From assembly GCA_047495785.1 (NCBI GenBank), contig JBLDXI010000028.1, positions 1 to 64,000 of the forward strand: DNA of 64,000 nt. The letters run 5' to 3'. The notes under the pieces are model-generated. The model ran no database searches. It worked only from the letters and a program-made list of their open reading frames with translations, and had not been told where the DNA came from. This document shows positions 1-23,941 of the stretch, piece after piece (position 1 is the stretch's first letter; each line of letters starts with the position of its first letter). Both the position numbers and the translations under genes were made by a program. The DNA comes from Lepidodermella squamata. Its lineage: Eukaryota; Animalia; Gastrotricha.

Positions 1-49
1 CTCAGCGCGCCGCAAAGTCGAGAAATGACGTCGGTTACTAGGCTGAATG

Positions 50-269
50 GTATTTCGTGATCCGAGAGCTTCCACTCGCCTTCTACTCCGGGAGTAGGTT
101 GTAGGTTACTTTCGGAGTAGGCTACTCTCAGAGTAGAAGGCGTTTACTCCTAGAGTAGATACCTCTAGGTTTGTTACTCTTTGACACTAAGCTTTTGAAT
201 TATCATTTTCTATCTAAAATTAGGATTACATCTGAGAGCAGATCCTCTAGCTCTCGGATCACGAAATAC
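50..269. mobile_element. MITE-like element with 21-bp perfect inverted ends; mirror at 15680-15899
   Basis: GTATTTCGTGATCCGAGAGCT (50-70) and AGCTCTCGGATCACGAAATAC (249-269); internal short palindromes of the TACTC..GAGTA type. Confidence 0.7.
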
Positions 270-1291
270 GAGCTCTACTAGGGCTAGCTCTACTAGTCTC
301 TTCATTAGTGTTACTGATTTGAGAAACGAAAAGAAACTTTTGTTGTCTGCTCGGTGATAACCGTAGAAAAAAACCAGGCTTTTTAGGGTTCACGTCCTGT
401 CTATACTTCTTTATTCAGTATAACTGCAGCACGTGGGCCTCCAAGATCGCAGATCGCCTTAGTGCCCATCATCGATAGCAGCTAAGAAAGTTGGTGGATG
501 GTCGTTATCCAGAAACGACGACTGTTATGAATATGAGGTGGCGGTACTTTAAGAAAGCCCAGGCATTTCGCCGTACAATTTCGCTATTAACGACTCTGTA
601 CAGCCATGACTGTAGAAACATATCGGTAGAGCGCCCTGACAAAAGAATTGAAGAAAATGAAGGAACTGACTGATGGCTGTAACAATGATCATGCCCACAG
701 CAGATCCCAAATCTACAGTAAACCCGTACTGCCGATCGGAATCGACGGCGACAACGATGTTACTCGTCTGAGGAAAGCTGCCGCAAACAGCGAGGGTAGT
801 GATGGAACTCGCGGCCTCTCCTGCTATGCAGGGAAATGTTGGCTGTCCTCATCAAAAGAGTAGTCAAAAAATACTCATCCTATCAATTGGCAGCTCTGAC
901 GGCTATCAATGCTATCGAAACCAGAATATGACGACGAATTCATTTGCGCGAGAGCGGCAACTCAGCACCTTACCTCAGCAAATCATACATACATTTAGAG
1001 CTATCAAAACACCGTTTCTGAAATATAGGGACTAGTTAAGTTCTTCTCAGAACGTCTTCGGGAATGGTGAATATTTCTCTCAATCGTATTTTTTTACTTG
1101 AATCTTCCAGGAAAATTAACCGTACATGATAAGTCGATAGTTTTTGGCTAAAACCCCATTTATAAACTTTAAAACAACAAATTGTTGAAGACGTTAAACA
1201 TTCAAAAAGTCTGAGCGTATTTTATTGAACAGAATTGACAGAAATAATGTAACGCGTGTAGCGAAGATTAAAGTCACTACATATATAATGA

Positions 1292-1531
1292 TAGACAAAC
1301 CGCGTGGTCAAAGTGGATATGCGAGTTTACGAGCATATACGAGGCAGCGCAGCTGCCACATGTGTTGCAAAGCACGAGACTCACGAGGCGTAGCCGAGTG
1401 AGTCGAGGGCTTAGCAACACTGAAACGAGACTCGCGAGGCGAAGACGAGAGAGTCAAGTTTATGTGGCAGCTGGCTTCCGAGTTTTTTGCTCGTCAACTC
1501 GCATAACACGTGTGGACAGGCGGTTTGTGTA
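1292..1531. repeat. Palindromic element with ~70-bp imperfect inverted ends and two internal GNA-loop mini-hairpin motifs; mirror at 14418-14657
   Basis: TAGACAAACCGC...CAGCTGCCACAT versus ATGTGGCAGCTG...GCGGTTTGTGTA. Internal ACGAGACTCACGAGGCGTAGCCGAG and ACGAGACTCGCGAGGCGAAGACGAG. Confidence 0.7.
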
Positions 1532-1669
1532 TTTATTCCACGTTGTTGCTCATGTCCTGATGGTTTTCGCGTAGGTAATTGGTCTTTTTACCTATAATTT
1601 TTGTCCATTTCTCTAATGAATTCAACCGAACAATGAAAAAATTGAGAAGAAAAAAATGATAAAAAACCG

Positions 1670-1740
1670 TGCACCACCAGGAATCGAACGTGTGAAGCTA
1701 ATGTTAAAAGCATCAACAACCTTTCATTAGCCACTGGTGA
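1670..1740 (-). tRNA. Degenerate tRNA-like unit (TTT at anticodon position), probable pseudogene; mirror at 14209-14279 (+)
   Basis: TCACCAGTGGCTAATG (A-box-like); anticodon arm TGATG-CTTTTAA-CATTA; GTTCGATTCC (B box); CACCA/TGGTG acceptor pairing; followed by a T6 terminator. Confidence 0.6.
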
Positions 1741-1810
1741 CCAAAAAACCATTATCAATTGCTTCTCTGAATCAACTAAAATACCAAAATTGAGCATCTT
1801 GATTTATCCA

Positions 1811-1883
1811 GCCCTTGTAGTCTAGTGGTTGGATTGCTGCTTAGGTTACAGGGAATCATTGGTTCGATGCCTCGTGCGAGCTC
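1811..1883 (+). tRNA. Degenerate tRNA-Pro(AGG)-like unit, probable pseudogene; mirror at 14066-14138 (-)
   Basis: TAGTCTAGTGG A box, CTTAGG anticodon loop, GGTTCGATGCC B box, ...CGAGCTC 3' end and a T6 terminator. Stems are imperfect. Confidence 0.6.
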
Positions 1884-1946
1884 TTTTTTATTTTCACTTT
1901 GAAAACGGTTTTAAGCTTATAAGCCCCTTTTAGGATAAACATTTGT

Positions 1947-2021
1947 GCGTGTCGTCGTTGTCTAGTTGTTTAGCCTTGTGCTAAAAGACAGCGAGCATCG
2001 GGTTCAACGCCCGCTCACGTC
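1947..2021 (+). tRNA. Degenerate tRNA-like unit; mirror at 13928-14002 (-)
   Basis: TTGTCTAGTTG A-box-like motif, intact T-arm CGGG-TTCAACG-CCCG, and GCGTG/CACGT end pairing. Confidence 0.5.
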
Positions 2022-2254
2022 AAAAAAACAAAAAAAACTTGGAATTAATTTTCCAAGTTCAAGTTCTGGGTATATGGCATATCCTAGCTAAATGGCTGGG
2101 ACCATATACGAGTGGTCCACAGCGAGCACACGTATATGTCAGAAACTGCCGAGATACATCGGACGAAAAGCATTAGGATATGAGCAACAGTGGTATAAAA
2201 TCTCCCTAGCTGATTTTATATCAATCAATTAAACGGAACAATCTATTCATCGGC

Positions 2255-5200
2255 TCACTTTGCCGAACACAAGTGACACAAATATTCTTCTTTTTTAGTA
2301 GGTTTTTTTCTTAACCCTGAGCAATTTCCATGAGTCCACAAGTGGCATGTGGAACACTCCACCCACCAACCATTCATGCAATCTGTCACTTTCAAGCATA
2401 CAACGCATCCATCTTCATCTGAATCAGTTATATTTGGCGATGGCGGCGAAATCAAAATTGAATTGACATTTATTTTACAAGTTGGGCGCTTTTTTCTCAA
2501 AATGGGCGATTCTTTTGGCGATGAACATTCAGTGACAAAGGGAGACATATTTTCAGCAGCTGGGTGATTTTCAGCTACAGTAATCGTTGATGCTGCTACA
2601 CTGATGGATCGCGGGCAACAGTAGATTACGCCGGCGATTTGATACCGTTCATTCTGCAATCTTCCGATAGAGCTTTGTTGCCACGAAATCAAAGCTGAAT
2701 GAATGTAAGTTATTAATTTTTGTTTACCATAATTAATTTGCTATCTTACATTTTTGCGCAGCCGTATCATCGATGAGGCCCACAGATGTTTCAGTCAAGG
2801 CGAAAGCGGTGATTGTCACGTAATGGCTGCCGTTAAGCAGTATCGCGGAGTGACGTTGATATCTATTACACCATGTAAACAGGTTATCGGAATTCAGGTT
2901 ATTTATAGGAAATCCTCACATTTTATCGTCATATTGCAGGTTTTCGGGGAACATGAAGATTTCAGAAGCAACAAAAATAGGATCGCATTCTTGGACATCC
3001 ACGTAGATGAACGGCAAGGCCTTTGATGGTGCCACGGTTCTTTGTCCATTACAATAAACTTGCCTGTTCAACTTGATTGTTGATCATGTTTTTTATGTTG
3101 CTAATTAACTCACATTATTTTTCCGGCTTGTGCGGCCATAACATAGCAAAGGCCCCGAGGGCAACCAGAATCGGCGACATCTGTGTAGCTTTTACCGGGG
3201 AACGGTCGCGTACAACGCTGGGTTATTGCAGCCAGTGAATCGGTTAGCAGGGCATTATTGTTCGATTTTTTGTCAGGATTTTGTTGATTTTCTCTGAATT
3301 TTCTATTTTGATAGATACAAATAGTTAGCTTACAAGTGGTTGAAGCTTGGAAGTTATTTACAATTTCAAATCTGCTGGTGGATCAACTTTCAGCAGTTGT
3401 CTCGAGGAGGCTGTTGGCAAGGGACAGTAATTGCTGCTGCAGGTTTCCTGACGTTTCAATCCTGCTTGCTCCATAATGACGTTGAATAACGCGCCCGCAA
3501 TATGGTCCAGCTTGGCTCGGTGTTTGCCGCTTCGTTTCGTAAATTTCATTATGCTCTGCATGCCGCTGTTATTTCTAAGGAAGGCCATTCTTGCTTCTTG
3601 GCATGCCTCTTCAATTGTTGTCGCCGTCAATAACTGGAGCAGCTGTTTGAAGTCGACTGATGGTACGTCGTTTCGGGCATGCATAAGCGCAGTGATAATT
3701 GCATCCAGCGCACATAAATTACCAACTGAAAATTTTCCTGTTTCGCAGGTATTCGGTAGGCAGATGACAGGTGGCTGCATAACCAAACTCGCCTCTGTTT
3801 TGTTGATATCAGATTCAGCAGCCTGATGAACATGATTGCGTTGATTAAACTGCTCTGCGTGCACCCGCAATTTGCTCGTTGAGTTGGCGCACAATATCGG
3901 AGTTCGGCTCGCAAGCAGCCGCTTTGCTACCCGCCTTGGCGTTAGAAAGGCTCATGGATTGGTAGTGGTAGGCCGAATTCGGATCACAACGCCTGGACCA
4001 TTCAGCTGTTGCAGCGGCGATATCAACGGTTTTTTCCGACTCCGTTTGATCGGCTAACCCCCTGCTAGATTTCACTGCTGGCTTTGATTGTTTCGGCTGC
4101 GATATCTTGACAGGATTGGCACGTTTTCGACCTGCCTTCGCCAGCAAAGGGAACTTGAGATCGGCCAAAACTGCACCTACGGTGTCGATCAAGTACTGCT
4201 TGAGGCGTTCAATAAACGGCCCTAGAGCAAAACGCTTTCCGTCGAGCACGTCGATTTTAAAATGACGAAATTCGGACTCTTTGGCCGAATTACTAATCCT
4301 TGTCGCGCCCTGTGGCTGCAGCTTCGTTCTCACGGGCACGGTGCATTTTGGTGTGCCATCTATCTTATAATTCATGCCGAGCATTATTCCCGACCACAGA
4401 AGTATGACAGGCATTCGTCGATTTTTTAGTGCTTTAACACACTGTGGGCGATAAATTTCGTTCCGAACAAGCTTATCAGCGGGCAATTTCTCGAAAATTG
4501 CTGCCTGGGCTGCTTTGATTTTGACTGTCAAATCAATGAAATGCCTTCCTGACGGCGTGCTTTCAGCGAGAGTTCCATCGAACGAATAGTCATTCACTTC
4601 GTCATAAGATTCATCAGAATCCGCTTCCAGCTGATCTATTTCTGAATCTGGCAACAATTCAGCCGCCTCGGATAACGAAATCACTCGACTTTGATCAATG
4701 CTGATTTCTAAAACCGCCATCAGTTCTTTCTCGGCCTCATAGTCGACGAATTCAGAGTCGAAAATTCGAACAATGAGCGAGTAGATTTTTTCGGCTTGAG
4801 CCAGAGTCGCACAATTTTGAAGTCGAGCAAAACAGGATGTTAATAAACGGCGAGACAGCTTTGCTGTTTTCTGACTAACTGGCTCGGTGTTGTCAAGTTT
4901 AGCAAACAAGTCGGCTGTAGCCTTGATACAGTGGTTGTTGCAGATCGCAAGAAACGTCATGTCGTCTACTTCTTTGGCCTCGGCACCAGAAACTACAAAC
5001 CTCCAAACCTTCTGAAGGTATGGAATGAGGTCTATGCCGTTAAAGGCTTTAGTTACGCCATGAAGAAGGGCCCAGCAGAAGTCCGATACAACAAATGACG
5101 GTTTCGGAATCGGACTTGGCTTGAAGTTGTCGAGTTTATATTTGACAATGTCAAGGTAATGGGAGATGTCCAGCGTTCGTTGTTTCGTTAGAAGAAACTG

Positions 5201-6466
5201 CAAAATCGGCAAAGTTCCGAAGCTCTCAGACAAATGGAGGTTGGTGGTTTGCGAAATGATGAAATTGAAATATTGAATCGCCTCAACGTGTTTGCTTCGA
5301 GTAACCACGCTTGAAGTGGAATCGATCATCATGACCGGGCGAGGTTCGAAGAACATTTCACCAGCGTGCAAAGCTGGACTTGAAGCTGCAAGTATGCAGC
5401 AACAGGCTCAGTCGTGTAAGTTTCGATAAATTTGAGTTCATCATCCAATGATTTTTCGAAATTGTATCGTAATTCAAGTTCTTCTCCATAATTGGAAGAA
5501 AACTTGTTCGAAGCATTTTTCTCATATTCTGCTTTCTTGACGGTGCTGTAGGATGGAATGCCCGTGAAGTTTCCATTAAGGACCGCTATTGGGTCATTCT
5601 CCGTGGCTACTCGTTTCAAATGCTTCTGCTTCTCGCTCGGCTTCTGAGTCATGGCTTGAACTTTCGCCCTCTCAGGCCCTGATAGAGGTGGTATAACACC
5701 CGGCACGTGCCATTCAGTCTCGCCAGTTTTCGGATTGATAATTTCGACTGGGTCTGGGTGGATTTGCTGATTAGTCCACGAGAAATGAATGCTTACCGAC
5801 AGCTGTGATGGTTGAGGCGGAACGATTGTGGCGATAATTATCCTCGGACAGTCTGTGTGAAGACACGCGCAAGACATCTCGATCATGCTCGGTTCTCTTC
5901 TAACTTGGCCCTTCACTTTGGGCTTGACACGAACGTAGGAATTCACTCCTTTGAGAACACACTTTTTCTCAACTACGCGTTGGTAAATTTGCCGCAGCCC
6001 AGTTACCCAAACATACTCTCGCAATCTCAGCGGCTTTTCGTTTCGATTACTGGCATTGTTTTGGATTGGCTTGAAAGACGCTTCGAATTCGTCGTATGAA
6101 ATTGTTGTATTGCATTCACCGTCCTCTATTGGGCAGACGTGGCAAGGTTCAGGCGATGATGAAGAAACCGACTCGTCGTCGCTGTCAGCCTTAGTTTTCA
6201 AACGCGACGATACCCAAGCGCTCAAATCACTCAAAGGCCCTGTCGTCAAATCATTATACAACCGTTTCCTAGCCTCTTCAGTGTTCCGGAAGTTGCTTTT
6301 TGTCAGAACAATCGAATAGAAACCGCTGGATGGTTTCGAACATTGCCGTACTACGTCACTTGGAACTTTGTTACCCCACTCTGGGTGGTCTTTGAGATAA
6401 ATTTCTACGGCGTGACGATGAACGTTACAAGGACCAGCCCCCCTTCTGGACGAATTCCTCGCTCAT
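2255..6466 (-). CDS. Mirror copy of the Mutator-like transposase-USP-PHD gene
   Basis: ORFs 5329-6261, 3845-5371, 3358-3894 and 2255-2692 match the right-arm copy except one Ser/Pro change and a 3-nt longer G run near the 5' end. The same introns and frameshifts are present. Confidence 0.85.
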
Positions 6467-7302
6467 AGACTTGATGTAAAATTAACTTTCTATAACATTT
6501 CAAGCAAATATTTATATACTTCCATTTTGCCATTAGTATAGACTTGAAAAATTAAAATTGGAGAAATCGTCGTGAGAAGGTTAAAAAACCTGCTGAACAG
6601 CCTATTGAAACATATGAAATTGGTCGAAAATCCTCACCGAGGTCGGAAATTAAACGAGGTAGTCCAACTGAAAGCGAAAAAACCTGAAATCGAGCCCGAG
6701 CCAGTTGAAAAATGTATTGAATATCTCCTTACAAAAGACGAGAAATAATGCGTCGAAAAACGAAACCAGGCGGCCGATCTGATGTTCGAAATCATCCTAT
6801 CAACTTGAAATGCACCTTAACACGCCAGTTTGAAGATGGGTTGGTAAAATGGCCTCAGAAACTTGCTGTTGACTATCAAGCCTCGAAATCGAAAAATTTA
6901 CTCAAAACTGTCAAGCATCATTCAGTTGTGGTTTGAAGCAATCAATGAAAAACGGCGAAGAATTATTTCATAAAAAGGTAAGCTAATTTTAGGCGTGAAT
7001 TTTCAAAAGTTTGCAATTTGGGAATTGCGAGCGTAGTAAATCCTGTTGTTAAGGTGGATTATGTTGACCTTTCTTAGTGCAATAACTTCCGCTGATATCG
7101 CGAATAATCCCGTCTTTCCTTCTCTTGAAAAATTAGCGATATAATTTTTCACTTCAACAAATGTTTGGAGGGTTCTAATCTGCGGGCTTGGGAAACTATT
7201 TTAAGGTGGAATTTCAGATTCTTATTGCCAGGCACGATGGCTATTTGATTGGAAACTTCTAAACTTCAGAATTTGCGCCATTACTACTTCATCTTGATAA
7301 TT

Positions 7303-8649
7303 CCTTTCCCTGTTCCTTACCTAGGTATTCCTCTCGTTATTAATTGCCAAATTCCTTGCTTTTGACATTTATTGGAACTTGTTTTTGTTCAGTTTTTCCG
7401 AAAAAAGTCTATTAGGTACTTTTACTGGGTTTTTTAAAACCGTTGTTTGGGACTTTATTGAAGATTTATGTGCTGTATTAATGGCACTCACTATTACGTT
7501 ACTTCGCTAATTCCAAATTGATTTGAGGTATCAATGTTACAAACCAGTCATTTTTATCGCCAGTTTAGAGTAAATGTAGTGTCAAGCGTGCATTCACCCA
7601 TTCCTGTCACCGCTTTGGAACAGTTTCAAATCGCTGTGATTGTAAGAAGTTTTGCTTTCATTAGTTGTTTCATGATGTTGTAGGGTGGTAATACAATAAT
7701 TACCGTATATAGGTAGAAATAAAGGGCAGTCTCGTAGAGAGCCTCCAGGTAATTCATATTTTTTACCCGTTATGCAAGCTGAAAAGGATAAAGATTTCGC
7801 TGCTATAACAGTTTACATTTTATTTTACAAAAATATCTAACTCTTGTGAATTTATTCTGTTCTTCCTCGATATGCTTTTCTGATCGATCGCCTTCGGTTT
7901 TCGCGCAACCGCTCTTTCAGCTGGCTTAGTTACTTTGCCCGAGTTCTTCCCTTCGCCTTATTGTGGCAGCATTCGATAATATAATATTTCGAGAAGAATC
8001 GCGAATAGAGTCGACAATTATGGCTTTTCCTGCTCGTGTCGTAGCTATAGTTATCAGACATAAAACATCATAACACATTTGACCTTAAATCCTATTGTTA
8101 GTTACCATGAAAGCCGGGTTTCAAGGTTGAAGTCGTACTGAAATTTCCGAAAATTCCAAGACCGAAAACAAACCCATCGAAATTGAAAAATTCGGAAAAT
8201 TTAGAGCTTAGAGTGCTTGAATTTTAGGCTGTTTGAAATCTACGGGTGAAACAGTGAAAAGTCATTTTACGAGCCTTCTTTCAGCCTCCAAATCCAATAA
8301 GATTCAGCCTCCACGGCATGAAATGCTCGAACATTTATGTCGGAACATTAGGTAAAATATATATTTTTGCGCTTGAGACTTTAAAAATATCGGCTGATTA
8401 ATGGCGAATCCTCAATTTGATATTGGAAAATGTTTACGAATGTTCATGTTTATATTTATTCGCCCATAAAGTTCGAGATGACAGCATACTTTACCACACC
8501 AATAGAATGGAAAATTCAAAAAATAGATGCATCAGTTGTTATCATTTGGTTCAGATTCTTCCAGCCGCATACAGCTGTTGATAGACTGCTTCAGTGTCGC
8601 AGCTCAGTTTCTTCCCATTTGCTAGCAGTAATTACCTAGGATAAAAATA
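7303..8649. other. Unique AT-rich spacer (loop) of the palindrome
   Basis: Symmetry breaks at 7303/8649. No long ORF. TTACCTAGG occurs at 7317-7325 and 8632-8640. Confidence 0.9.
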
Positions 8650-9485
8650 AATTATCAAGATGAAGTAGTAATGGCGCAAATTCTGAAGTTTAGAAGTTTC
8701 CAATCAAATAGCCATCGTGCCTGGCAATAAGAATCTGAAATTCCACCTTAAAATAGTTTCCCAAGCCCGCAGATTAGAACCCTCCAAACATTTGTTGAAG
8801 TGAAAAATTATATCGCTAATTTTTCAAGAGAAGGAAAGACGGGATTATTCGCGATATCAGCGGAAGTTATTGCACTAAGAAAGGTCAACATAATCCACCT
8901 TAACAACAGGATTTACTACGCTCGCAATTCCCAAATTGCAAACTTTTGAAAATTCACGCCTAAAATTAGCTTACCTTTTTATGAAATAATTCTTCGCCGT
9001 TTTTCATTGATTGCTTCAAACCACAACTGAATGATGCTTGACAGTTTTGAGTAAATTTTTCGATTTCGAGGCTTGATAGTCAACAGCAAGTTTCTGAGGC
9101 CATTTTACCAACCCATCTTCAAACTGGCGTGTTAAGGTGCATTTCAAGTTGATAGGATGATTTCGAACATCAGATCGGCCGCCTGGTTTCGTTTTTCGAC
9201 GCATTATTTCTCGTCTTTTGTAAGGAGATATTCAATACATTTTTCAACTGGCTCGGGCTCGATTTCAGGTTTTTTCGCTTTCAGTTGGACTACCTCGTTT
9301 AATTTCCGACCTCGGTGAGGATTTTCGACCAATTTCATATGTTTCAATAGGCTGTTCAGCAGGTTTTTTAACCTTCTCACGACGATTTCTCCAATTTTAA
9401 TTTTTCAAGTCTATACTAATGGCAAAATGGAAGTATATAAATATTTGCTTGAAATGTTATAGAAAGTTAATTTTACATCAAGTCT

Positions 9486-12400
9486 ATGAGCGAGGAATTC
9501 GTCCAGAAGGGCTGGTCCTTGTAACGTTCATCGTCACGCCGTAGAAATTTATCTCAAAGACCACCCAGAGTGGGGTAACAAAGTTCCAAGTGACGTAGTA
9601 CGGCAATGTTCGAAACCATCCAGCGGTTTCTATTCGATTGTTCTGACAAAAAGCAACTTCCGGAACACTGAAGAGGCTAGGAAACGGTTGTATAATGATT
9701 TGACGACAGGGCCTTTGAGTGATTTGAGCGCTTGGGTATCGTCGCGTTTGAAAACTAAGGCTGACAGCGACGACGAGTCGGTTTCTTCATCATCGCCTGA
9801 ACCTTGCCACGTCTGCCCAATAGAGGACGGTGAATGCAATACAACAATTTCATACGACGAATTCGAAGCGTCTTTCAAGCCAATCCAAAACAATGCCAGT
9901 AATCGAAACGAAAAGCCGCTGAGATTGCGAGAGTATGTTTGGGTAACTGGGCTGCGGCAAATTTACCAACGCGTAGTTGAGAAAAAGTGTGTTCTCAAAG
10001 GAGTGAATTCCTACGTTCGTGTCAAGCCCAAAGTGAAGGGCCAAGTTAGAAGAGAACCGAGCATGATCGAGATGTCTTGCGCGTGTCTTCACACAGACTG
10101 TCCGAGGATAATTATCGCCACAATCGTTCCGCCTCAACCATCACAGCTGTCGGTAAGCATTCATTTCTCGTGGACTAATCAGCAAATCCACCCAGACCCA
10201 GTCGAAATTATCAATCCGAAAACTGGCGAGACTGAATGGCACGTGCCGGGTGTTATACCACCTCTATCAGGGCCTGAGAGGGCGAAAGTTCAAGCCATGA
10301 CTCAGAAGCCGAGCGAGAAGCAGAAGCATTTGAAACGAGTAGCCACGGAGAATGACCCAATAGCGGTCCTTAATGGAAACTTCACGGGCATTCCATCCTA
10401 CAGCACCGTCAAGAAAGCAGAATATGAGAAAAATGCTTCGAACAAGTTTTCTTCCAATTATGGAGAAGAACTTGAATTACGATACAATTTCGAAAAATCA
10501 TTGGATGATGAACTCAAATTTATCGAAACTTACACGACTGAGCCTGTTGCTGCATACTTGCAGCTTCAAGTCCAGCTTTGCACGCTGGTGAAATGTTCTT
10601 CGAACCTCGCCCGGTCATGATGATCGATTCCACTTCAAGCGTGGTTACTCGAAGCAAACACGTTGAGGCGATTCAATATTTCAATTTCATCATTTCGCAA
10701 ACCACCAACCTCCATTTGCCTGAGAGCTTCGGAACTTTGCCGATTTTGCAGTTTCTTCTAACGAAACAACGAACGCTGGACATCTCCCATTACCTTGACA
10801 TTGTCAAATATAAACTCGACAACTTCAAGCCAAGTCCGATTCCGAAACCGTCATTTGTTGTATCGGACTTCTGCTGGGCCCTTCTTCATGGCGTAACTAA
10901 AGCCTTTAACGGCATAGACCTCATTCCATACCTTCAGAAGGTTTGGAGGTTTGTAGTTTCTGGTGCCGAGGCCAAAGAAGTAGACGACATGACGTTTCTT
11001 GCGATCTGCAACAACCACTGTATCAAGGCTACAGCCGACTTGTTTGCTAAACTTGACAACACCGAGCCAGTTAGTCAGAAAACAGCAAAGCTGTCTCGCC
11101 GTTTATTAACATCCTGTTTTGCTCGACTTCAAAATTGTGCGACTCTGGCTCAAGCCGAAAAAATCTACTCGCTCATTGTTCGAATTTTCGACTCTGAATT
11201 CGTCGACTATGAGGCCGAGAAAGAACTGATGGCGGTTTTAGAAATCAGCATTGATCAAAGTCGAGTGATTTCGTTATCCGAGGCGGCTGAATTGTTGCCA
11301 GATTCAGAAATAGATCAGCTGGAAGCGGATTCTGATGAATCTTATGACGAAGTGAATGACTATTCGTTCGATGGAACTCTCGCTGAAAGCACGCCGTCAG
11401 GAAGGCATTTCATTGATTTGACAGTCAAAATCAAAGCAGCCCAGGCAGCAATTTTCGAGAAATTGCCCGCTGATAAGCTTGTTCGGAACGAAATTTATCG
11501 CCCACAGTGTGTTAAAGCACTAAAAAATCGACGAATGCCTGTCATACTTCTGTGGTCGGGAATAATGCTCGGCATGAATTATAAGATAGATGGCACACCA
11601 AAATGCACCGTGCCCGTGAGAACGAAGCTGCAGCCACAGGGCGCGACAAGGATTAGTAATTCGGCCAAAGAGTCCGAATTTCGTCATTTTAAAATCGACG
11701 TGCTCGACGGAAAGCGTTTTGCTCTAGGGCCGTTTATTGAACGCCTCAAGCAGTACTTGATCGACACCGTAGGTGCAGTTTTGGCCGATCTCAAGTTCCC
11801 TTTGCTGGCGAAGGCAGGTCGAAAACGTGCCAATCCTGTCAAGATATCGCAGCCGAAACAATCAAAGCCAGCAGTGAAATCTAGCAGGGGGTTAGCCGAT
11901 CAAACGGAGTCGGAAAAAACCGTTGATATCGCCGCTGCAACAGCTGAATGGTCCAGGCGTTGTGATCCGAATTCGGCCTACCACTACCAATCCATGAGCC
12001 TTTCTAACGCCAAGGCGGGTAGCAAAGCGGCTGCTTGCGAGCCGAACTCCGATATTGTGCGCCAACTCAACGAGCAAATTGCGGGTGCACGCAGAGCAGT
12101 TTAATCAACGCAATCATGTTCATCAGGCTGCTGAATCTGATATCAACAAAACAGAGGCGAGTTTGGTTATGCAGCCACCTGTCATCTGCCTACCGAATAC
12201 CTGCGAAACAGGAAAATTTTCAGTTGGTAATTTATGTGCGCTGGATGCAATTATCACTGCGCTTATGCATGCCCGAAACGACGTACCATCAGTCGACTTC
12301 AAACAGCTGCTCCAGTTATTGACGGCGACAACAATTGAAGAGGCATGCCAAGAAGCAAGAATGGCCTTCCTTAGAAATAACAGCGGCATGCAGAGCATAA

Positions 12401-13694
12401 TGAAATTTACGAAACGAAGCGGCAAACACCGAGCCAAGCTGGACCATATTGCGGGCGCGTTATTCAACGTCATTATGGAGCAAGCAGGATTGAAACGTCA
12501 GGAAACCTGCAGCAGCAATTACTGTCCCTTGCCAACAGCCTCCTCGAGACAACTGCTGAAAGTTGATCCACCAGCAGATTTGAAATTGTAAATAACTTCC
12601 AAGCTTCAACCACTTGTAAGCTAACTATTTGTATCTATCAAAATAGAAAATTCAGAGAAAATCAACAAAATCCTGACAAAAAATCGAACAATAATGCCCT
12701 GCTAACCGATTCACTGGCTGCAATAACCCAGCGTTGTACGCGACCGTTCCCCGGTAAAAGCTACACAGATGTCGCCGATTCTGGTTGCCCTCGGGGCCTT
12801 TGCTATGTTATGGCCGCACAAGCCGGAAAAATAATGTGAGTTAATTAGCAACATAAAAAACATGATCAACAATCAAGTTGAACAGGCAAGTTTATTGTAA
12901 TGGACAAAGAACCGTGGCACCATCAAAGGCCTTGCCGTTCATCTACGTGGATGTCCAAGAATGCGATCCTATTTTTGTTGCTTCTGAAATCTTCATGTTC
13001 CCCGAAAACCTGCAATATGACGATAAAATGTGAGGATTTCCTATAAATAACCTGAATTCCGATAACCTGTTTACATGGTGTAATAGATATCAACGTCACT
13101 CCGCGATACTGCTTAACGGCAGCCATTACGTGACAATCACCGCTTTCGCCTTGACTGAAACATCTGTGGGCCTCATCGATGATACGGCTGCGCAAAAATG
13201 TAAGATAGCAAATTAATTATGGTAAACAAAAATTAATAACTTACATTCATTCAGCTTTGATTTCGTGGCAACAAAGCTCTATCGGAAGATTGCAGAATGA
13301 ACGGTATCAAATCGCCGGCGTAATCTACTGTTGCCCGCGATCCATCAGTGTAGCAGCATCAACGATTACTGTAGCTGAAAATCACCCAGCTGCTGAAAAT
13401 ATGTCTCCCTTTGTCACTGAATGTTCATCGCCAAAAGAATCGCCCATTTTGAGAAAAAAGCGCCCAACTTGTAAAATAAATGTCAATTCAATTTTGATTT
13501 CGCCGCCATCGCCAAATATAACTGATTCAGATGAAGATGGATGCGTTGTATGCTTGAAAGTGACAGATTGCATGAATGGTTGGTGGGTGGAGTGTTCCAC
13601 ATGCCACTTGTGGACTCATGGAAATTGCTCAGGGTTAAGAAAAAAACCTACTAAAAAAGAAGAATATTTGTGTCACTTGTGTTCGGCAAAGTGA
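9486..13694 (+). CDS. Mutator-superfamily (NOF-FB/Rehavkus-like) DDE transposase fused to a USP-like cysteine protease and a PHD finger; ~1,330 aa if repaired, frameshifted as given
   Basis: ORF 9688-10620 is open from 9490 and has a C-x4-C...H Zn-finger-like motif. ORF 10578-12104 has MMIDSTS (D, 10626), VVSDFCWAL (D, 10866), CNNH (CxxH, 11007) and SNSAKESEF (E, 11670). ORF 12055-12591 has a Cys box GNLCALDAII (Cys 12235). GT-AG introns 12588-12646, 12836-12885, 13030-13086 and 13200-13254 give an open frame through the His box YQRHSAILLNGSHYVT...LIDD into a C4HC3 PHD finger ending at 13694. Frameshifts near 10577, near 12084 and probably near 9510. Confidence 0.85.
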
Positions 13695-13927
13695 GCCGAT
13701 GAATAGATTGTTCCGTTTAATTGATTGATATAAAATCAGCTAGGGAGATTTTATACCACTGTTGCTCATATCCTAATGCTTTTCGTCCGATGTATCTCGG
13801 CAGTTTCTGACATATACGTGTGCTCGCTGTGGACCACTCGTATATGGTCCCAGCCATTTAGCTAGGATATGCCATATACCCAGAACTTGAACTTGGAAAA
13901 TTAATTCCAAGTTTTTTTTGTTTTTTT

Positions 13928-14002
13928 GACGTGAGCGGGCGTTGAACCCGATGCTCGCTGTCTTTTAGCACAAGGCTAAACAACTAGACAACGACGACAC
14001 GC
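13928..14002 (-). tRNA. Mirror copy of the tRNA-like unit at 1947-2021
   Basis: Same sequence in the right arm. Confidence 0.5.
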
Positions 14003-14065
14003 ACAAATGTTTATCCTAAAAGGGGCTTATAAGCTTAAAACCGTTTTCAAAGCGAAAATAAAAAA

Positions 14066-14138
14066 GAGCTCGCACGAGGCATCGAACCAATGATTCCCTG
14101 TAACCTAAGCAGCAATCCAACCACTAGACTACAAGGGC
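14066..14138 (-). tRNA. Mirror copy of the tRNA-Pro-like unit at 1811-1883
   Basis: Same sequence in the right arm. Confidence 0.6.
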
Positions 14139-14208
14139 TGGATAAATCAAGATGCTCAATTTTGGTATTTTAGTTGATTCAGAGAAGCAATTGATAATGG
14201 TTTTTTGG

Positions 14209-14279
14209 TCACCAGTGGCTAATGAAAGGTTGTTGATGCTTTTAACATTAGCTTCACACGTTCGATTCCTGGTGGTGCA
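14209..14279 (+). tRNA. Mirror copy of the tRNA-like unit at 1670-1740
   Basis: Same sequence in the right arm, followed by TTTTTT. Confidence 0.6.
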
Positions 14280-16480
14280 CGGTTTTTTATCATTTTTTTC
14301 TTCTCAATTTTTTCATTGTTCGGTTGAATTCATTAGAGAAATGGACAAAAATTATAGGTAAAAAGACCAATTACCTACGCGAAAACCATCAGGACATGAG
14401 CAACAACGTGGAATAAATACACAAACCGCCTGTCCACACGTGTTATGCGAGTTGACGAGCAAAAAACTCGGAAGCCAGCTGCCACATAAACTTGACTCTC
14501 TCGTCTTCGCCTCGCGAGTCTCGTTTCAGTGTTGCTAAGCCCTCGACTCACTCGGCTACGCCTCGTGAGTCTCGTGCTTTGCAACACATGTGGCAGCTGC
14601 GCTGCCTCGTATATGCTCGTAAACTCGCATATCCACTTTGACCACGCGGTTTGTCTATCATTATATATGTAGTGACTTTAATCTTCGCTACACGCGTTAC
14701 ATTATTTCTGTCAATTCTGTTCAATAAAATACGCTCAGACTTTTTGAATGTTTAACGTCTTCAACAATTTGTTGTTTTAAAGTTTATAAATGGGGTTTTA
14801 GCCAAAAACTATCGACTTATCATGTACGGTTAATTTTCCTGGAAGATTCAAGTAAAAAAATACGATTGAGAGAAATATTCACCATTCCCGAAGACGTTCT
14901 GAGAAGAACTTAACTAGTCCCTATATTTCAGAAACGGTGTTTTGATAGCTCTAAATGTATGTATGATTTGCTGAGGTAAGGTGCTGAGTTGCCGCTCTCG
15001 CGCAAATGAATTCGTCGTCATATTCTGGTTTCGATAGCATTGATAGCCGTCAGAGCTGCCAATTGATAGGATGAGTATTTTTTGACTACTCTTTTGATGA
15101 GGACAGCCAACATTTCCCTGCATAGCAGGAGAGGCCGCGAGTTCCATCACTACCCTCGCTGTTTGCGGCAGCTTTCCTCAGACGAGTAACATCGTTGTCG
15201 CCGTCGATTCCGATCGGCAGTACGGGTTTACTGTAGATTTGGGATCTGCTGTGGGCATGATCATTGTTACAGCCATCAGTCAGTTCCTTCATTTTCTTCA
15301 ATTCTTTTGTCAGGGCGCTCTACCGATATGTTTCTACAGTCATGGCTGTACAGAGTCGTTAATAGCGAAATTGTACGGCGAAATGCCTGGGCTTTCTTAA
15401 AGTACCGCCACCTCATATTCATAACAGTCGTCGTTTCTGGATAACGACCATCCACCAACTTTCTTAGCTGCTATCGATGATGGGCACTAAGGCGATCTGC
15501 GATCTTGGAGGCCCACGTGCTGCAGTTATACTGAATAAAGAAGTATAGACAGGACGTGAACCCTAAAAAGCCTGGTTTTTTTCTACGGTTATCACCGAGC
15601 AGACAACAAAAGTTTCTTTTCGTTTCTCAAATCAGTAACACTAATGAAGAGACTAGTAGAGCTAGCCCTAGTAGAGCTCGTATTTCGTGATCCGAGAGCT
15701 AGAGGATCTGCTCTCAGATGTAATCCTAATTTTAGATAGAAAATGATAATTCAAAAGCTTAGTGTCAAAGAGTAACAAACCTAGAGGTATCTACTCTAGG
15801 AGTAAACGCCTTCTACTCTGAGAGTAGCCTACTCCGAAAGTAACCTACAACCTACTCCCGGAGTAGAAGGCGAGTGGAAGCTCTCGGATCACGAAATACC
15901 ATTCAGCCTAGTAACCGACGTCATTTCTCGACTTTGCTACTGCTCAGCGCTCAGCGCGCCGCAATGTCGGCTTCACACACGTGACCCAACTCCGGGGCAA
16001 ATGCGATTTCTGTTGCTACTCAATTTATTAATCATTAATTTATATTTATTTTACTTTAATAATTAGAGCACCATTATCTTTAAATATTTTTGTCAAAACC
16101 AGATAACAACAGAATTTCTGAGACTTTGTCAAAAGCTGACTCTCGCAGCTACTTTTTTCCGAGCTTTGCAGTGTCAAAACTGTGGGTCATACGGAGACGG
16201 GGGTACACTCGTTTTACTCGTTGGATCATGCTATTGATGATTTCAACAATGCTACAATCGTAATTCCATTCTGCTGGAAGTTTTCTGTCAACTGATCCGA
16301 CGTGAAAGAAGAAAGAAGTAGTCATTTGAAACATCTTCGATCGTAGATGGCAATTCTGTCAAGTAAATGAGCTCGCATCCCTGAAATCAGGAAAAATACG
16401 CTGGATGTTGTGGGTATTGAGTATCTCCTATGGTCGGTTTATAAGTTCAGATTTATTCATAGATATACAGTTAATTGAAA

Positions 16481-18228
16481 ATGATTCTACGATACTTACG
16501 CCTACTGACGCGATCACTGGCGACCAAACGATTTCGTGTCGACCGTCGTCTTGCTCTTCTACCGCCAAAGCTTAATACGAGTCACAATTCATTCATCATT
16601 TTCCGGCGTTCCTTCTCAGCCGTGCCATCCAAGAATGCCTGGCTTGACTTTGCTAAACGAGCCACAATGGGCAAACTTGTCGGTACTGCTGTCGTGTTTG
16701 TTTTTGGTAGTATCCCACTTAACTACGCCTATTTTAGATATAAGGATGCGGCAGCGTTGAAACATCGTTTAGAACAAGGCTCTGGCGCATTTTTAGTCGG
16801 GAAAAAGACAGTTTTGATTGATCGTCCAGAGTTGGAGAAGGATTTGAAAGAAATGATAACGCCATCAACACCGGGCGAAGCTGAAAATTATTTCCTCATT
16901 ACTGGAGAGCATGGCACAGGCAAGACGACTGCGGTTATGAAAACGTGTCGAACTGTTGGCAGCGGCGTGATTTATGTGGATGTCCCGATAAATGGTGATA
17001 AATTTGCTGGTGCTTTCGCCGAGGCTACCGCCTACAAAACTCGTGCTAGCGGATTGTTTCGATTCTTAAACAAACAATTTTTCGGAGACGAGCCGACTAC
17101 TACTGTAAAGCCATGTAAGGTGAAAATAGAGTTTCACGCTCTCATTTATATTAGACGTGCCGAATAGAAAGGTCCCTTGTTTACAGCCTAATAAGAATCT
17201 GAGGGGAATTGTGATAGTACATTTATTAGTGCGTAGTCACCCCAATTGTGTGACGCAACAAAAGCGACAAGGGCCTTTTCTGTGAGGCACATCTCATATG
17301 TGCTTTACGCTCTATATGTGCTATATTTGTTCTTCTATAGGGAATGAAGGAAACTGGGACGCTATTTACAGTGCGTTCCAACAAACAGCGAATTGGTACA
17401 TGGCGAAATATGATAAAGTACCTGTTCTTATCATCGACAACGTGAATAGGCTGGCAAAAGAGAATCCAAAAATGTTAGCATCGCTTCAAGAAGGCGCAAA
17501 AGACGCCATTGACCGCGGTCTATTCGTTACTGTATTTGTATCATCCGATGGCGTGGCGCCTCAGCAAATTACGAGTTCGTTTATTTCCTGTCAATTCGTT
17601 TCAGTCATTCAGCTAACTGTTTTATTTATTCAATAGGCAGAAGTGCCTTTTCACGTGGGAGGTTGTATCGCGTAGGCGATGCGAATCAAGAGCAAGTGTT
17701 CGAGTACCTTCAGAAACGTGGCGTGGTGAACACTGATGGTACGCTCTACTCGCGCGTATTTGCTCTTGTCGGTGGACGTTTGAAAGAGTTGAGCCGTGTT
17801 TCTGCTGCCCTGACAAAGGGAAAATCTTTTCAAGGTACTCACTTGTATTTTGCTCTTCTATATATGTAAACACTATTACGCGTTTTATAGACGTGAAGAA
17901 GGCGCTCTTTGCACAGGTTCAGAAACAACTCGCGGAGTGCCGGACTACGAATGAAAGTGCGACTCTCCTGCAAGCCGTTGTTAACTGTACGAAAACGCAG
18001 CCGGTGTGCGATGTCAGCGACGTTCAGCTATATTTGAGCAAGGGTGGTTCAGCTTTTCGTTTTTTTTTCGGTTCAACTGTCGATGATGAGAAGATTCAAA
18101 ATGTCGTGGATAAAATGGCTTCGGCAAACCTGCTTTCAAAGTTCACAAAATCGAGCTGGACGTTTCACTCAAATGTTGAGAGGTCATACTTTGAGGAACA
18201 CCCACAGGTTACGGTCATGTCACGATGA
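16481..18228 (+). CDS. P-loop (AAA+/STAND-like) ATPase with an Arg-rich N-terminal presequence and one TM helix; 4 exons, 467 aa
   Basis: Exons 16481-17114, 17341-17574, 17637-17834 and 17891-18228 join in frame via GT-AG introns (1,404 nt). Walker A GEHGTGKT, Walker B VLIIDNVN, then VFVSSDG and RSAFSR motifs. TM segment LVGTAVVFVFGSIPLNYAYF. Confidence 0.85.
17157..17290. mobile_element. Small MITE-like insert in ATPase intron 1
   Basis: Imperfect inverted ends GTGCCGAATAGAAAGGTCCCTTGT and ACAAGGGCCTTTTCTGTGAGGCAC. It would account for this intron being 226 nt while the others are ~60 nt. Confidence 0.5.
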
Positions 18229-18789
18229 GCATGGCGTGATGATCTTTTTGTTTCTCCTGACGCCAGTCCATAATATTTAATAAACAAAATGCTTAGCGAT
18301 GATTTAACGTGTTATTTATTGTCAATTATTATGTGCGTAAATATGTGGTAACGAACTTGAATTATTCTGTGTATTATATAACACATGGGCCTCGGTGAAT
18401 TATTCGAGACATGGCAGATGATGCACGAGGCGGAGGCCGAGGCGTTATTGGCCATTTCGAGAATAATGACCAAGCACCATGGGTTATTTGATAGAGACCA
18501 CCGATGCCGCCAGACAGGGCTGACAGGTGCGCAATAGAATTCAACATTTTGAATTATATTAGGGCGTAATAAATTCTGTTTGTTCGCAGAAAAGTTGGCG
18601 AATTTTTGAAATTTTGGAAATTTTTGTACAGGAACCCTTTTCAATCGATAGAGAATCTTCTGAATTTCTTGTTGGTACCGATGCCGCCAAGTTATTGGAA
18701 AGTATTCCTTTGATATCAGTGCGAGCGGTCCAGAATTTGTTTAAAATTTAGACTCTGCTGATGCGCGCGCGATGACGGCAATAGATGAG

Positions 18790-20844: not shown

Positions 20845-21249
20845 ATGTATATATGTCACATTTAAAGTCGACAATTGTGAAATGTTGACAATATATAACA
20901 TAAATAGCCATTTAATGTGTATAAAATGCCACCCCTGTAAATTGCCATGTTGACCTCAAGGTGAAATCCACTCCGAGGAATCCGAATCTGACATCGTCAA
21001 ATTCATAGCGATTACCCAAATTTCGTAAAATTCGATTTTCGAAAATTGATATCGATTTATTATCAGTTTTTGGCCAATTACTTCCCATGATCGGGAAAAT
21101 GAGTTCAGATTCGGATTCCTCGGAGTGGATTTCACCTTGAGGTCAACAAGGCAATTTACAGGGGTGGCATTTTATACACATTAAATGGCTATTTATGTTA
21201 TATATTGTCAACATTTCACAATTGTCGACTTTATATATGACATATACAT
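20845..21249. mobile_element. Foldback MITE with ~145-bp inverted arms and TA-rich ends
   Basis: AAAGTCGACAATTGTGAAATG...GAGGAATCCGAATCTGA is mirrored by TCAGATTCGGATTCCTC...CATTTCACAATTGTCGACTTT. Confidence 0.85.
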
Positions 21250-22259: not shown

Positions 22260-22412
22260 ACTGCTTGAAGGTTGCCGGTTAGTTTTTTTCAATTAATGTT
22301 ATCATTTTCATACCAAACTTTTTTGCATTATATTCATTTGTTTAACCCGTATAAAACCGACCCTTGATTCCGCCGACGCCGCTCATTCCAGCGAAACAAA
22401 GAAAAGTAAAGA
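22260..22412 (+). repeat. ~150-bp dispersed repeat; inverted copy at 33042-33200
   Basis: Exact shared blocks ACTGCTTGAAGGTTG and TTCCGCCGACGCCGCTCATT with colinear similarity between them. Confidence 0.75.
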
Positions 22413-23941
22413 TAAGTAGTAGAGCCCTTATCACTCCGATTTATAAAAATAAGGGTGAAAAATCCAAGTGTCAAAATTATCGAGGCATCAGTCTGCTTTC
22501 TGTTGTAGGTAAACTTTATGCTGTTATCCTCGAAAGAAAACTAAGGTCTTTGATTGGATCGAAAATCTCCAAATTACAATTCGGATTTCAGCCTCTTAAA
22601 GGCACCCGTGATTGCATTTTTGTTCTTAGACAAATAATTGAAAAAATTATTTTCTTTCGCAAAGAACTTCACCTTGTCTTCATTGACCTCGAAAAAGCCT
22701 ATGATCTGGTTGATAGGGAAAAGGTTTGGACAGCCTTGGAAAACATGGGTGTTGAAACTAGCCTTATTGACGCGATTAAGAGTCTATATAAAGTAAATAA
22801 AGTTGCGGTAAAAGTGGATTCTGAGGTCTCCGAATTTTTCTATGTAACTAGGGGTCTAAGGCAAGGCTGCCCGCTGTCCCCTCTGCTTTTCATTGCTACT
22901 TTTAACAAAATTTGCGAACAATTATACGACACAAAATTTGGTTTCCCTATGAACAACGGTGATTATCTAAATTTATTAGCTTTCGCCGATGATGGAACTC
23001 TCCTAGGCATGAACCATGACGAAATTAAGCGCCTTCTAGAAATTTTTGACATGGCATGCGAAGAATTAGGATTGAAAATTAACGTGGCAAAAACTCAATA
23101 CATGATAATCTCCAGGGACGATGCTGCAGTAAGAAATTATGAACTAGAGCTGCGCGGATCGAAACTGGAAAAGGTCTCCAAATTCAAATACTTAGGTAGC
23201 ATTATAACCAGCGACGGTCGCATTGACGAAGAATTAAATTATAGAATTTCAAAGGCTGGCAGCGTATTTGGTGCGATGAATAAATTCATGTGCAGTAGGA
23301 ACCATGTGTCATTACAAACCAAATTGAAAGTACTCACTTGCGTCATCGTACCTACCATCATTTACGCCTGCGAATCCTGGAATATTTCTTTAAGCCAGGA
23401 AAATAGGTTGAATGTTTTAGAATATCGTTGGCTACGAGCGATTTTAGGTATACACCTGATGGATTATATTCCTAACATTGACATTAGATTGGCATTGTGC
23501 GGAGGTCTGATCGAAGTCAGCCGCATCATTGAAAAACAGCGTTTAAGATATCTAGGACACATCATTAGATCTCGTGATTACGATGAGGACGGCCTTCTGA
23601 ACTTGATTTATACGTGGACACCTCCGTTCGGGTGGTTCGCACCGAGAGGCAGACCTCGAACTAGGTGGATAAACGGCATAAACAGAAGTCTACACAAGGT
23701 TGGCATTGGTAAGGAAGTTCGCCGGAAGAAAAGACAACCCAAAAATCAGAAAGGCAAAAAGCCAGCTAAAAACAAAAAATCCGGCGAAAAAGAAAATAAA
23801 TTTGAAATTAAAATTATTCCTGATCTGCAATTGATTGAATTACTTTCTTTTGATAAAACTGAATGGCGCAACATTGTTGACTCAATGAATGATTATGAAT
23901 TTTTTGGAAAAAGTAGAATCTTCAACTGTGGGGGTGGGTGA
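22364..23941 (+). CDS. Reverse transcriptase of the RTE LINE (endonuclease missing; first ~21 codons are flank/TSD)
   Basis: NYRGISLL, QFGF, FIDLEKAYD, GLRQGCPLSPLLF, FADD, GLKIN..KT, FKYLGS, RLRYLGHIIR, RGRPRTRW. Confidence 0.93.
   Translation: MIPPTPLIPAKQRKVKISSRALITPIYKNKGEKSKCQNYRGISLLSVVGKLYAVILERKLRSLIGSKISKLQFGFQPLKGTRDCIFVLRQIIEKIIFFRKELHLVFIDLEKAYDLVDREKVWTALENMGVETSLIDAIKSLYKVNKVAVKVDSEVSEFFYVTRGLRQGCPLSPLLFIATFNKICEQLYDTKFGFPMNNGDYLNLLAFADDGTLLGMNHDEIKRLLEIFDMACEELGLKINVAKTQYMIISRDDAAVRNYELELRGSKLEKVSKFKYLGSIITSDGRIDEELNYRISKAGSVFGAMNKFMCSRNHVSLQTKLKVLTCVIVPTIIYACESWNISLSQENRLNVLEYRWLRAILGIHLMDYIPNIDIRLALCGGLIEVSRIIEKQRLRYLGHIIRSRDYDEDGLLNLIYTWTPPFGWFAPRGRPRTRWINGINRSLHKVGIGKEVRRKKRQPKNQKGKKPAKNKKSGEKENKFEIKIIPDLQLIELLSFDKTEWRNIVDSMNDYEFFGKSRIFNCGGG

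What the first reader, a model, noticed from the sequence alone, without database searches (positions are those of the whole stretch)
12..15937. 16-kb near-perfect palindrome with two divergent transposase genes
Arms of ~7.3 kb differ at only three sites in my spot checks, so the duplication is very recent, actively homogenised or artefactual. It resembles a giant foldback element whose 'TIRs' contain the whole gene. However, there is no 9-bp TSD (CAGCGCGCC vs TACTGCTCA) and the arms include MITE-like passengers. If real, it can form a large stem-loop, and read-through transcription would give kilobases of dsRNA able to silence the family, as with maize Mu killer (an inverted-duplicated MuDR derivative).
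Basis: partly seen in the sequence, partly recalled or inferred. Interest (0 to 1): 0.75.

Follow-up and report, generated by a model that had tools for sequence, protein, structure and literature searches.

The report
Fold-back chimera at a contig tip
The 16-kb near-perfect palindrome is really in the assembly, but it sits at the very tip of a contig and both turning points look like strand-switching by the DNA-amplification enzyme, so it is most likely a laboratory and assembly artefact laid over one real jumping gene.

Summary
Arms 12-7302 and 8650-15937 differ by two substitutions and one 3-nt indel, around a 1347-nt spacer.

The window is the first 64 kb of contig C28, so the palindrome starts 11 nt from a contig end. 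A related copy on contig C32 (83-97% identical) and a shorter one on C38/C112 are not palindromic. The C32 copy is collinear only with the right arm plus spacer and continues 200 nt beyond the arm, to 16139. So the right arm is the natural sequence, the arm ends are not transposon ends (hence no target-site duplication), and the left arm is the extra piece.

Junction 1 lies on an 8-nt inverted microhomology (TGATAATT). Junction 2, 11 nt from the contig start, lies on gcaa(a/t)gtcg and would create a 7.3-kb palindrome with a 23-nt loop.

The assembly's size matches the published Lepidodermella squamata genome. That genome came from phi29-amplified (MDA) DNA of one animal, and its chimera screen could not detect same-locus fold-backs. 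MDA chimeras are typically inverted, under 10 kb apart and joined at 2-21 nt of complementarity.

Verdict: MDA fold-back chimera kept at a contig tip, about 0.72. A real recent inverted duplication is about 0.2. No reads were available. Each arm carries the genome's only intact copy of a divergent MULE-like gene with a PHD-finger exon. Other notes of this scan report similar fold-backs elsewhere in this genome.

The parts
1..11 (+). Junction 2 overhang: an 11-nt direct copy of window 15950-15960 joined to the outer end of the left arm. The contig starts here.
   Evidence: Window 1-20 matches 15950-15969 at 19 of 20 positions. The switch lies inside gcaa(a/t)gtcg. One search shows the window is C28:1-64000.
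12..7302 (-). Left arm: an inverted copy of 8650-15937. It is the extra copy and carries the derived state at both differences that could be polarised.
   Evidence: for identity; (the C32 copy is collinear with the other arm plus spacer); for polarity of the differences.
7295..7302 (+). Junction 1 microhomology TGATAATT. Its inverted partner AATTATCA is at 8650-8657.
   Evidence: The 8-mer ends the arm in both copies and also precedes the far end of the spacer in the C32 copy.
7303..8649 (-). Spacer, 1347 nt, non-coding. It is the natural inward neighbour of the right arm.
   Evidence: C32:3900855-3902149 is collinear with the reverse complement of window 7295-9904; no ORF longer than 69 aa.
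8650..15937 (+). Right arm: the natural copy of the element's interior, continuous with the rest of the contig.
15938..16139 (+). Outer ~200 nt of the element, not duplicated. Homology to the related copies ends at 16139 (…AAAAGCTGA).
9688..13694 (+). Multi-exon element gene, mirrored at 2255-6261 on the - strand. Exon-sized ORFs are 9688-10620, 10578-12104 (MULE-like transposase core), 12055-12591 (weak USP-like lead) and 13257-13694 (PHD finger). The exons were searched one by one and were not joined.
   Evidence: Searches show these are the only intact copies in the genome.
13756..14665 (.). Passenger insertion of ~910 nt (mirrored at 1284-2193), probably composite, lying in a TATA site. 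It is absent from the C32, C38 and C112 copies.

Best explanation
One real copy of a large MULE-like DNA transposon lies at the start of contig C28, running from 16139 leftwards through the right arm and the spacer. The left arm is not genomic. It is the product of strand switching by phi29 polymerase during multiple displacement amplification (MDA). A growing strand's 3' end came off its template at 7303 and re-annealed through 8 nt (AATTATCA on TGATAATT) to a displaced strand 1.35 kb away. It then copied the element back outwards for 7.3 kb. A second switch of the same kind took place at the small inverted repeat gcaaagtcg / cgacattgc. Shown: the geometry, the microhomologies, the contig-tip position, and the non-palindromic related copies. 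Inferred: that the DNA was MDA-amplified (from matching assembly statistics and a paper) and that the assembler kept a chimeric tip.
For: 1. The palindrome starts 11 nt from the contig start.
2. The C32 copy is collinear only with the reverse complement of window 7295-16139, that is right arm plus spacer plus 200 nt beyond the arm. Neither C32 (30 kb examined) nor C38/C112 has any inverted repeat there.
3. Junction 1 sits on an 8-nt inverted microhomology. Junction 2 sits on a 9-nt imperfect one, of which 4 nt are exact.
4. Whichever strand was the growing one, one of the two junctions needs annealing ahead of the 3' end. The displaced-strand MDA model allows this; simple hairpin self-priming does not (PMC1855051).
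5. Junction 2 implies a 7.3-kb palindrome with a 23-nt loop, which is not expected to be stable in a living genome (established knowledge).
6. Both differences that could be polarised are derived in the terminal left arm.
7. The genome is 121,234,032 bp in 151 contigs. The Lepidodermella squamata assembly is 122,829,359 bp in 157 contigs with 43.3% GC. It was made by MDA of one animal, HiFi reads averaging 13.4 kb, and hifiasm. Chimeras were screened only through read ends that mapped to different contigs (PMC11660948). C32 and C38 are 97% identical and collinear, matching the reported 2.99% heterozygosity.
8. In MDA, 85% of chimeras are inverted, mostly under 10 kb apart, and 93.5% of those join at 2-21 nt of complementarity. 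Reads from amplified DNA can hold several palindromes (PMC6218980).
9. Other notes of this scan list many fold-backs and near-perfect palindromes of roughly 11-20 kb in this genome. I did not check them.
Against: No reads, read depth or second data set could be examined, so nothing here shows directly that the left arm is absent from the animal.

No other contig holds the spacer or a continuation like that of C32. The genuine path to the left of 7303 is therefore missing from the assembly, which is also what a real fold-back would give.

The arms differ at three sites, including a +CCC. That is more than phi29 errors should produce and more than hifiasm should leave uncorrected in a single read. 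It needs an extra assumption: an uncorrected read, a re-amplified lineage, or the other allele in a stretch of low heterozygosity.

The species and library identity rest on matching statistics and on unchecked notes, not on a sequence match. A contig break at a repeat boundary can also be caused by a real repeat.
Confidence: 0.72

Rival explanations
1. It is a real, very recent inverted duplication made in the animal by replication template switching or by fold-back repair of a break at short inverted repeats (FoSTeS/MMBIR type, possibly DUP-TRP/INV-DUP). It doubled the only intact copy of the element. The contig breaks there because the identical arms tangle the assembly graph.
For: The same microhomology signature is produced in living cells. 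No alternative leftward path exists in the assembly. The three arm differences fit a short period of independent divergence. Other palindromes are noted in this genome, which could reflect biology.
Against: Junction 2 would make a 7.3-kb palindrome with a 23-nt loop, which is expected to be unstable. The contig ends 11 nt after that junction. The third copy and the duplicated spacer that this model predicts are not in the assembly. The arm boundary lies inside the element, and the related copies are not palindromic. The likely library type produces exactly this structure at high frequency.
Confidence: 0.2
2. It is an older genomic palindrome whose arms are kept identical by arm-to-arm gene conversion, as in sex-chromosome palindromes.
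For: Arms are near-identical around a kb-sized spacer.
Against: The duplication is younger than a passenger insertion that the 92-97% identical related copies lack. The arms end inside a transposon and in a second fold-back. There is no diverged outer edge and no conserved counterpart on C32 or C38.
Confidence: 0.04
3. It is a giant foldback transposon whose terminal inverted repeats each contain the whole gene and which moves as a unit.
For: Two long inverted arms, each carrying a transposase gene.
Against: There is no target-site duplication. The right arm stops 200 nt short of the element's end at 16139. The left arm ends in junction 2. No second palindromic copy exists in the genome.
Confidence: 0.02

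Closest known systems
Inverted chimeras of multiple displacement amplification (Lasken and Stockwell 2007, PMC1855051) and palindromic long reads after whole-genome amplification (Pacasus, PMC6218980)
   Same: Two segments are joined in inverted orientation, 1.35 kb and 23 nt apart (both under 10 kb). The junctions lie on 8 nt and 4-9 nt of complementarity. There is more than one fold-back on one molecule. One junction needs annealing ahead of the 3' end.
   Different: Here the structure is seen in a finished contig, not in a read. That the DNA was amplified is inferred, not shown from the data.
Foldback artefacts in unamplified long reads (Heinz, Meyerson and Li 2025, PMC12338684)
   Same: A near-perfect palindromic read structure that can pass for a fold-back inversion.
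   Different: Those artefacts turn within 200 bp at the same mapped place, and were almost absent from the PacBio HiFi data examined. Here the turn encloses 1.35 kb of genuine genomic spacer, which points to polymerase strand switching, not to an unsplit read.
Maize Mu killer (an inverted-duplicated partial MuDR that silences MuDR through hairpin RNA; cited from my own knowledge)
   Same: An inverted duplication of a Mutator-superfamily element that could, in principle, give long double-stranded RNA.
   Different: Mu killer is a heritable locus with shown transcription and small RNAs. Here existence in the genome is doubtful, transcription is untested, and no active family exists to be silenced.
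DUP-TRP/INV-DUP rearrangements from replication template switching (cited from my own knowledge)
   Same: Two template switches, an inverted middle copy, and microhomology or short inverted repeats at the junctions.
   Different: The third copy and the second spacer copy that such a structure predicts are not in the assembly. The outer palindrome would have only a 23-nt loop.

Membership tests
MDA (phi29) inverted chimera | The template DNA was amplified by multiple displacement amplification | tested here: inconclusive
   Assembly size, contig number and allelic divergence match the published MDA-based L. squamata assembly, and earlier notes name the same species. There is no sequence-level proof of identity.
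MDA (phi29) inverted chimera | Segments are joined in inverted orientation and lie under 10 kb apart in the genome | tested here: met
   Junction 1 joins 7303 to 8650 (1.35 kb apart). Junction 2 joins 15937 to 15960 (23 nt apart).; criterion.
MDA (phi29) inverted chimera | Short complementarity (2-21 nt) at the junction | tested here: met
   TGATAATT (8 nt) at junction 1. gcaa(a/t)gtcg at junction 2, 4 nt exact or 9 nt with one mismatch.
MDA (phi29) inverted chimera | The junction is absent from unamplified DNA of the same organism | not testable with these tools
Foldback transposon (element with giant terminal inverted repeats) | The arm ends are the element's ends and are flanked by a target-site duplication | tested here: not met
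   There is no duplication. The element continues to 16139 beyond the right arm. The left arm ends in a fold-back junction.
Foldback transposon (element with giant terminal inverted repeats) | Other copies share the palindromic build | tested here: not met
   The C32 and C38/C112 copies have no inverted repeat. No other close copies exist.
Mu killer-like silencing locus | A heritable inverted duplication of a Mutator-type element, transcribed into hairpin RNA that yields small RNAs | not testable with these tools
   The inverted duplication exists in the assembly only. No RNA or small-RNA data were at hand.
MULE (Mutator-like) transposase | A match to the MULE catalytic domain (PF10551) | tested here: inconclusive
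   The 508-aa ORF itself has no Pfam hit even at E<=10. Of 71 phmmer relatives, 7 carry PF10551 (best E 1.5e-5). The ESM Atlas neighbours are MULE clusters at scores of 0.89-0.94.
MULE (Mutator-like) transposase | A conserved acidic residue and a CxxH motif in the catalytic core | tested here: met
   D97, C144 and H147 are invariant across the 71 aligned relatives. That this is the MULE signature rests on my own knowledge.
MULE (Mutator-like) transposase | Terminal inverted repeats and a 9-11-bp target-site duplication at the element's ends | tested here: inconclusive
   Only one end (16139) is in the window. No inverted partner was found within 30 kb of the C32 copy.

The most novel reading that the evidence does not exclude
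The fold-back is real. In this reading a gastrotrich recently turned the only intact copy of a PHD-carrying MULE-like transposon into a 16-kb hairpin locus through two microhomology-guided template switches. That would be a natural Mu-killer-like source of double-stranded RNA, caught within about 0.04% divergence of its birth, in a genome that other notes suggest holds many such palindromes.
Probability: 0.2. Interest if true: 0.6.

Novelty: not a real feature. Interest (0 to 1): 0.15.

Why it matters
The practical value is quality control. If the genome is the published first gastrotrich assembly, its chimera screen looked only for read ends mapping to different contigs and reported no chimeric contigs, so it could not see same-locus fold-backs. 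This contig tip, and the other palindromes noted in the scan, should therefore not be read as biology (gene duplicates, invertible cassettes, hairpin-RNA loci) until they are checked against reads or unamplified DNA. If the structure were real, it would be a very young natural hairpin locus of a Mutator-type element in an animal.

Tried and rejected
- **Survey of other contig ends.** I tried to fetch other contig starts to look for terminal palindromes.
- **Exact look-up of five window ORFs.** None is in the collection.
- **Word-based protein searches.** The transposase ORF and the MRP-S26 gene found nothing, so the species could not be named from sequence.
- **True leftward continuation.** The 3.85 kb that follows the spacer in C32 has no close counterpart elsewhere in the genome.
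- **Allelic contig of the C28 start.** None was found.
- **Second end or TIR of the element.** None was found in 30 kb of C32.
- **tRNA and Rfam scan of the arms.** Nothing was found.
- **PDB profile search with the transposase family.** No meaningful hit.
- **Allelic origin of the arm differences.** This fails at the genome-wide 3% heterozygosity and is tenable only in a stretch of low heterozygosity.
- **Polarising P48S.** This failed because the alignment column is mostly gaps.
Full report
**1. The observation**

The inverted repeat is real in the sequence. BLAST and MAFFT of the two halves place the arms at 12-7302 and 8650-15937. They align over 7291 columns at 99.93% identity, around a 1347-nt spacer (7303-8649). 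The arms differ at three sites:
- left 1896 A versus G at 14053;
- left 5230 A versus G at 10719, which changes Pro48 to Ser in the 508-aa ORF;
- an extra CCC at left 6438-6440.

Nothing else like this occurs in the 64-kb window.

**2. Position in the assembly**

The window is G000:C28:1-64000. The palindrome therefore begins 11 nt from the start of a contig, in a genome of 121,234,032 bp in 151 contigs.

**3. What related copies show**

Close relatives of the arm exist at only two other loci: C32:3890267-3902149 and C38:621497-626970. The second locus is repeated at 100% identity on the 46-kb contig C112.

C32 and C38 are 97% identical and collinear, flanks included. They are therefore two haplotypes of one older insertion.

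The C32 copy is collinear with the reverse complement of window 7295-16139. That span is the right arm, the spacer in the orientation in which it is attached to the right arm, and about 200 nt beyond the right arm. No inverted repeat was found in the 30 kb of C32 examined, nor in the C38 and C112 stretches.

Three things follow:
- Right arm plus spacer is the natural order, and the left arm is the addition.
- The arm ends are not the element's ends, which explains the missing target-site duplication.
- The palindromic build is not a property of the element family.

**4. The two junctions**

*Junction 1.* The contig reads …cttcatcTTGATAATT|CCTTTCCC…. The natural arm continues …TTGATAATT|TATTTTTATCC…. 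The C32 copy has …CTACTTGCTGATAATT|CCTTTCCC… at the far end of the spacer. The switch therefore used an 8-nt inverted microhomology whose two sites lie 1.35 kb apart.

*Junction 2.* Window 1-11 (CTCAGCGCGCC) is a direct copy of 15950-15960 and is joined to the outer end of the left arm. The natural sequence there is gcaaTgtcgg, whereas the arm has gcaaAgtcga, so the switch lies in a small imperfect inverted repeat with a 23-nt loop.

Extended leftwards, the contig would run into a third copy of the arm. That copy and the left arm would form a 7.3-kb palindrome separated by only 23 nt. Long palindromes with such short loops are not expected to persist in living cells (established knowledge).

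Whichever strand was the growing one, one of the two junctions requires the 3' end to anneal ahead of its own position. A simple snap-back hairpin cannot do that. A displaced strand in a branched amplification product can (PMC1855051).

**5. Where the DNA probably came from**

A paper found while searching for chimera mechanisms describes the first gastrotrich genome, Lepidodermella squamata. It was made by MDA of a single animal, HiFi sequencing with a mean read length of 13,358 bp, and hifiasm 0.15.2. After decontamination the assembly had 157 contigs, 122,829,359 bp, 43.28% GC, an N50 of 3.92 Mb and 2.987% heterozygosity (PMC11660948).

The genome here has 151 contigs and 121.23 Mb. At least eight contigs exceed 3 Mb, judging from match coordinates. 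Haplotype pairs are 97% identical. Many earlier notes of this scan reached the same species by other routes; I did not check them.

I could not confirm the identity by sequence. The word-based protein searches and the exact look-ups returned nothing.

The paper's chimera screen removed only reads whose two ends mapped to different contigs, and Alvis reported no chimeric contig. A fold-back within one locus passes both checks.

**6. Fit to known artefacts**

In MDA, 85% of chimeras are inverted joins. Most of these have partners less than 10 kb apart, and 93.5% of those show 2-21 nt of complementarity at the junction. In PacBio data from amplified DNA, 40-50% of reads held at least one palindrome and some held up to 15.

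Both junctions here meet these criteria. The whole structure (15.9 kb) is about the size of one HiFi read.

Fold-back artefacts of unamplified long reads are a different thing. They turn within 200 bp at the same mapped place and were almost absent from the HiFi data examined.

**7. Polarity of the differences**

The extra CCC is absent from the right arm and from C32. At 1896/14053 two dispersed copies of the passenger element carry G, as the right arm does. So at both sites that could be polarised, the terminal left arm is the derived one. The third site could not be polarised. This is weak support (n = 2) for the left arm being the copy with less read support.

**8. What argues the other way**

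- I had no reads, no depth information and no second data set.
- The assembly holds no other copy of the spacer and no C32-like continuation. No allelic contig of the C28 start exists either. The genuine leftward path is thus missing, which a real fold-back would also produce.
- Three differences in 7.3 kb are more than phi29 errors predict and more than read correction should leave. The artefact reading needs an uncorrected read, a re-amplified chimeric lineage, or an allele from a stretch of low heterozygosity.
- Template switching at microhomology also happens in cells.
- My argument that a contig ending 11 nt beyond a junction marks a junction without read support is an inference about how the assembler behaves. 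It was not tested.

**9. What the arms carry**

Each arm holds a multi-exon gene pointing away from the spacer. I searched the exons one by one and did not join them.

- The 508-aa exon ORF (10578-12104) has no Pfam hit and no word-search hit. It does have 355 phmmer relatives at E<=0.001.
- Of 71 aligned relatives, 7 match PF10551 MULE. D97, C144 and H147 are invariant across the 71. ESM Atlas neighbours are MULE clusters.
- The nearest relatives are 800-1250-aa proteins with PHD fingers. The window's last exon has a borderline PHD match.
- A USP-like domain in 12055-12591 is only a weak lead.
- This is the only copy in the genome with intact frames.

So the word 'transposase' is reasonable. 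The two genes, however, are one gene written twice.

**10. Verdict**

| Reading | Probability |
|---|---|
| MDA fold-back chimera retained at a contig tip | about 0.72 |
| Real recent fold-back duplication | about 0.2 |
| Conversion-maintained palindrome, or true foldback element | a few per cent together |

As a biological finding this scores low.

Noticed in passing
L019/L022/L023 (C112:5001-35000) versus L020/L024 (C38:612001-632000): The 46-kb contig C112 is 100% identical to C38 over at least 17.5 kb, apart from a 1,164-nt stretch present only in C38 (621884-623048). It looks like a redundant contig in the primary assembly.
   Followed up: partly
L017/L021/L018 (C32:3886001-3916000) versus C38/C112: C32 and C38 are ~97% identical and collinear over 30 kb, including the flanks of the element, with a 13-kb length difference inside. 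They look like uncollapsed haplotypes, which matches the ~3% heterozygosity reported for L. squamata.
   Followed up: partly
window 16475-17167 and 16300-18400: An ORF with weak AAA_16 / STAND NTPase matches belongs to a repeat family with more than 15 copies clustered on C11:1.647-1.714 Mb (81-92% identical) and one copy on C15 (88%).
   Followed up: no
window 22364-23941 (+): A 525-aa ORF with a strong reverse-transcriptase match (RVT_1, E 7e-37), so a retroelement lies close to the contig start. The first ~24 kb of C28 is largely repeats.
   Followed up: no
window 20850-21246: A ~400-nt stretch that is its own reverse complement at 85% identity: a small, diverged and therefore probably genuine fold-back element. 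It makes a useful contrast with the 99.93% identical giant arms.
   Followed up: no
window 12055-12591 (+) and 13257-13694 (+): The element's gene seems to add a USP/UCH-like piece (ESM Atlas 0.84-0.86, a lead only) and a PHD finger (22.8-23.4 bits, just below Pfam's cut-off) to the MULE-like core. The closest relatives elsewhere are 800-1250-aa proteins with PHD fingers above the cut-off.
   Followed up: partly
C32:2307300-2310700: A distant relative of the same element: 73-85% DNA identity to parts of the spacer and of the C32 continuation, and 28-32% protein identity to the transposase ORF. It might reveal the element's missing second end.
   Followed up: no
window 41509-42258 (-): An intron-less 249-aa ORF matching mitochondrial ribosomal protein S26 (E 1e-24). 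No relative at E<=1e-10 turned up in the word-based protein search, which fits a poorly sampled phylum.
   Followed up: partly
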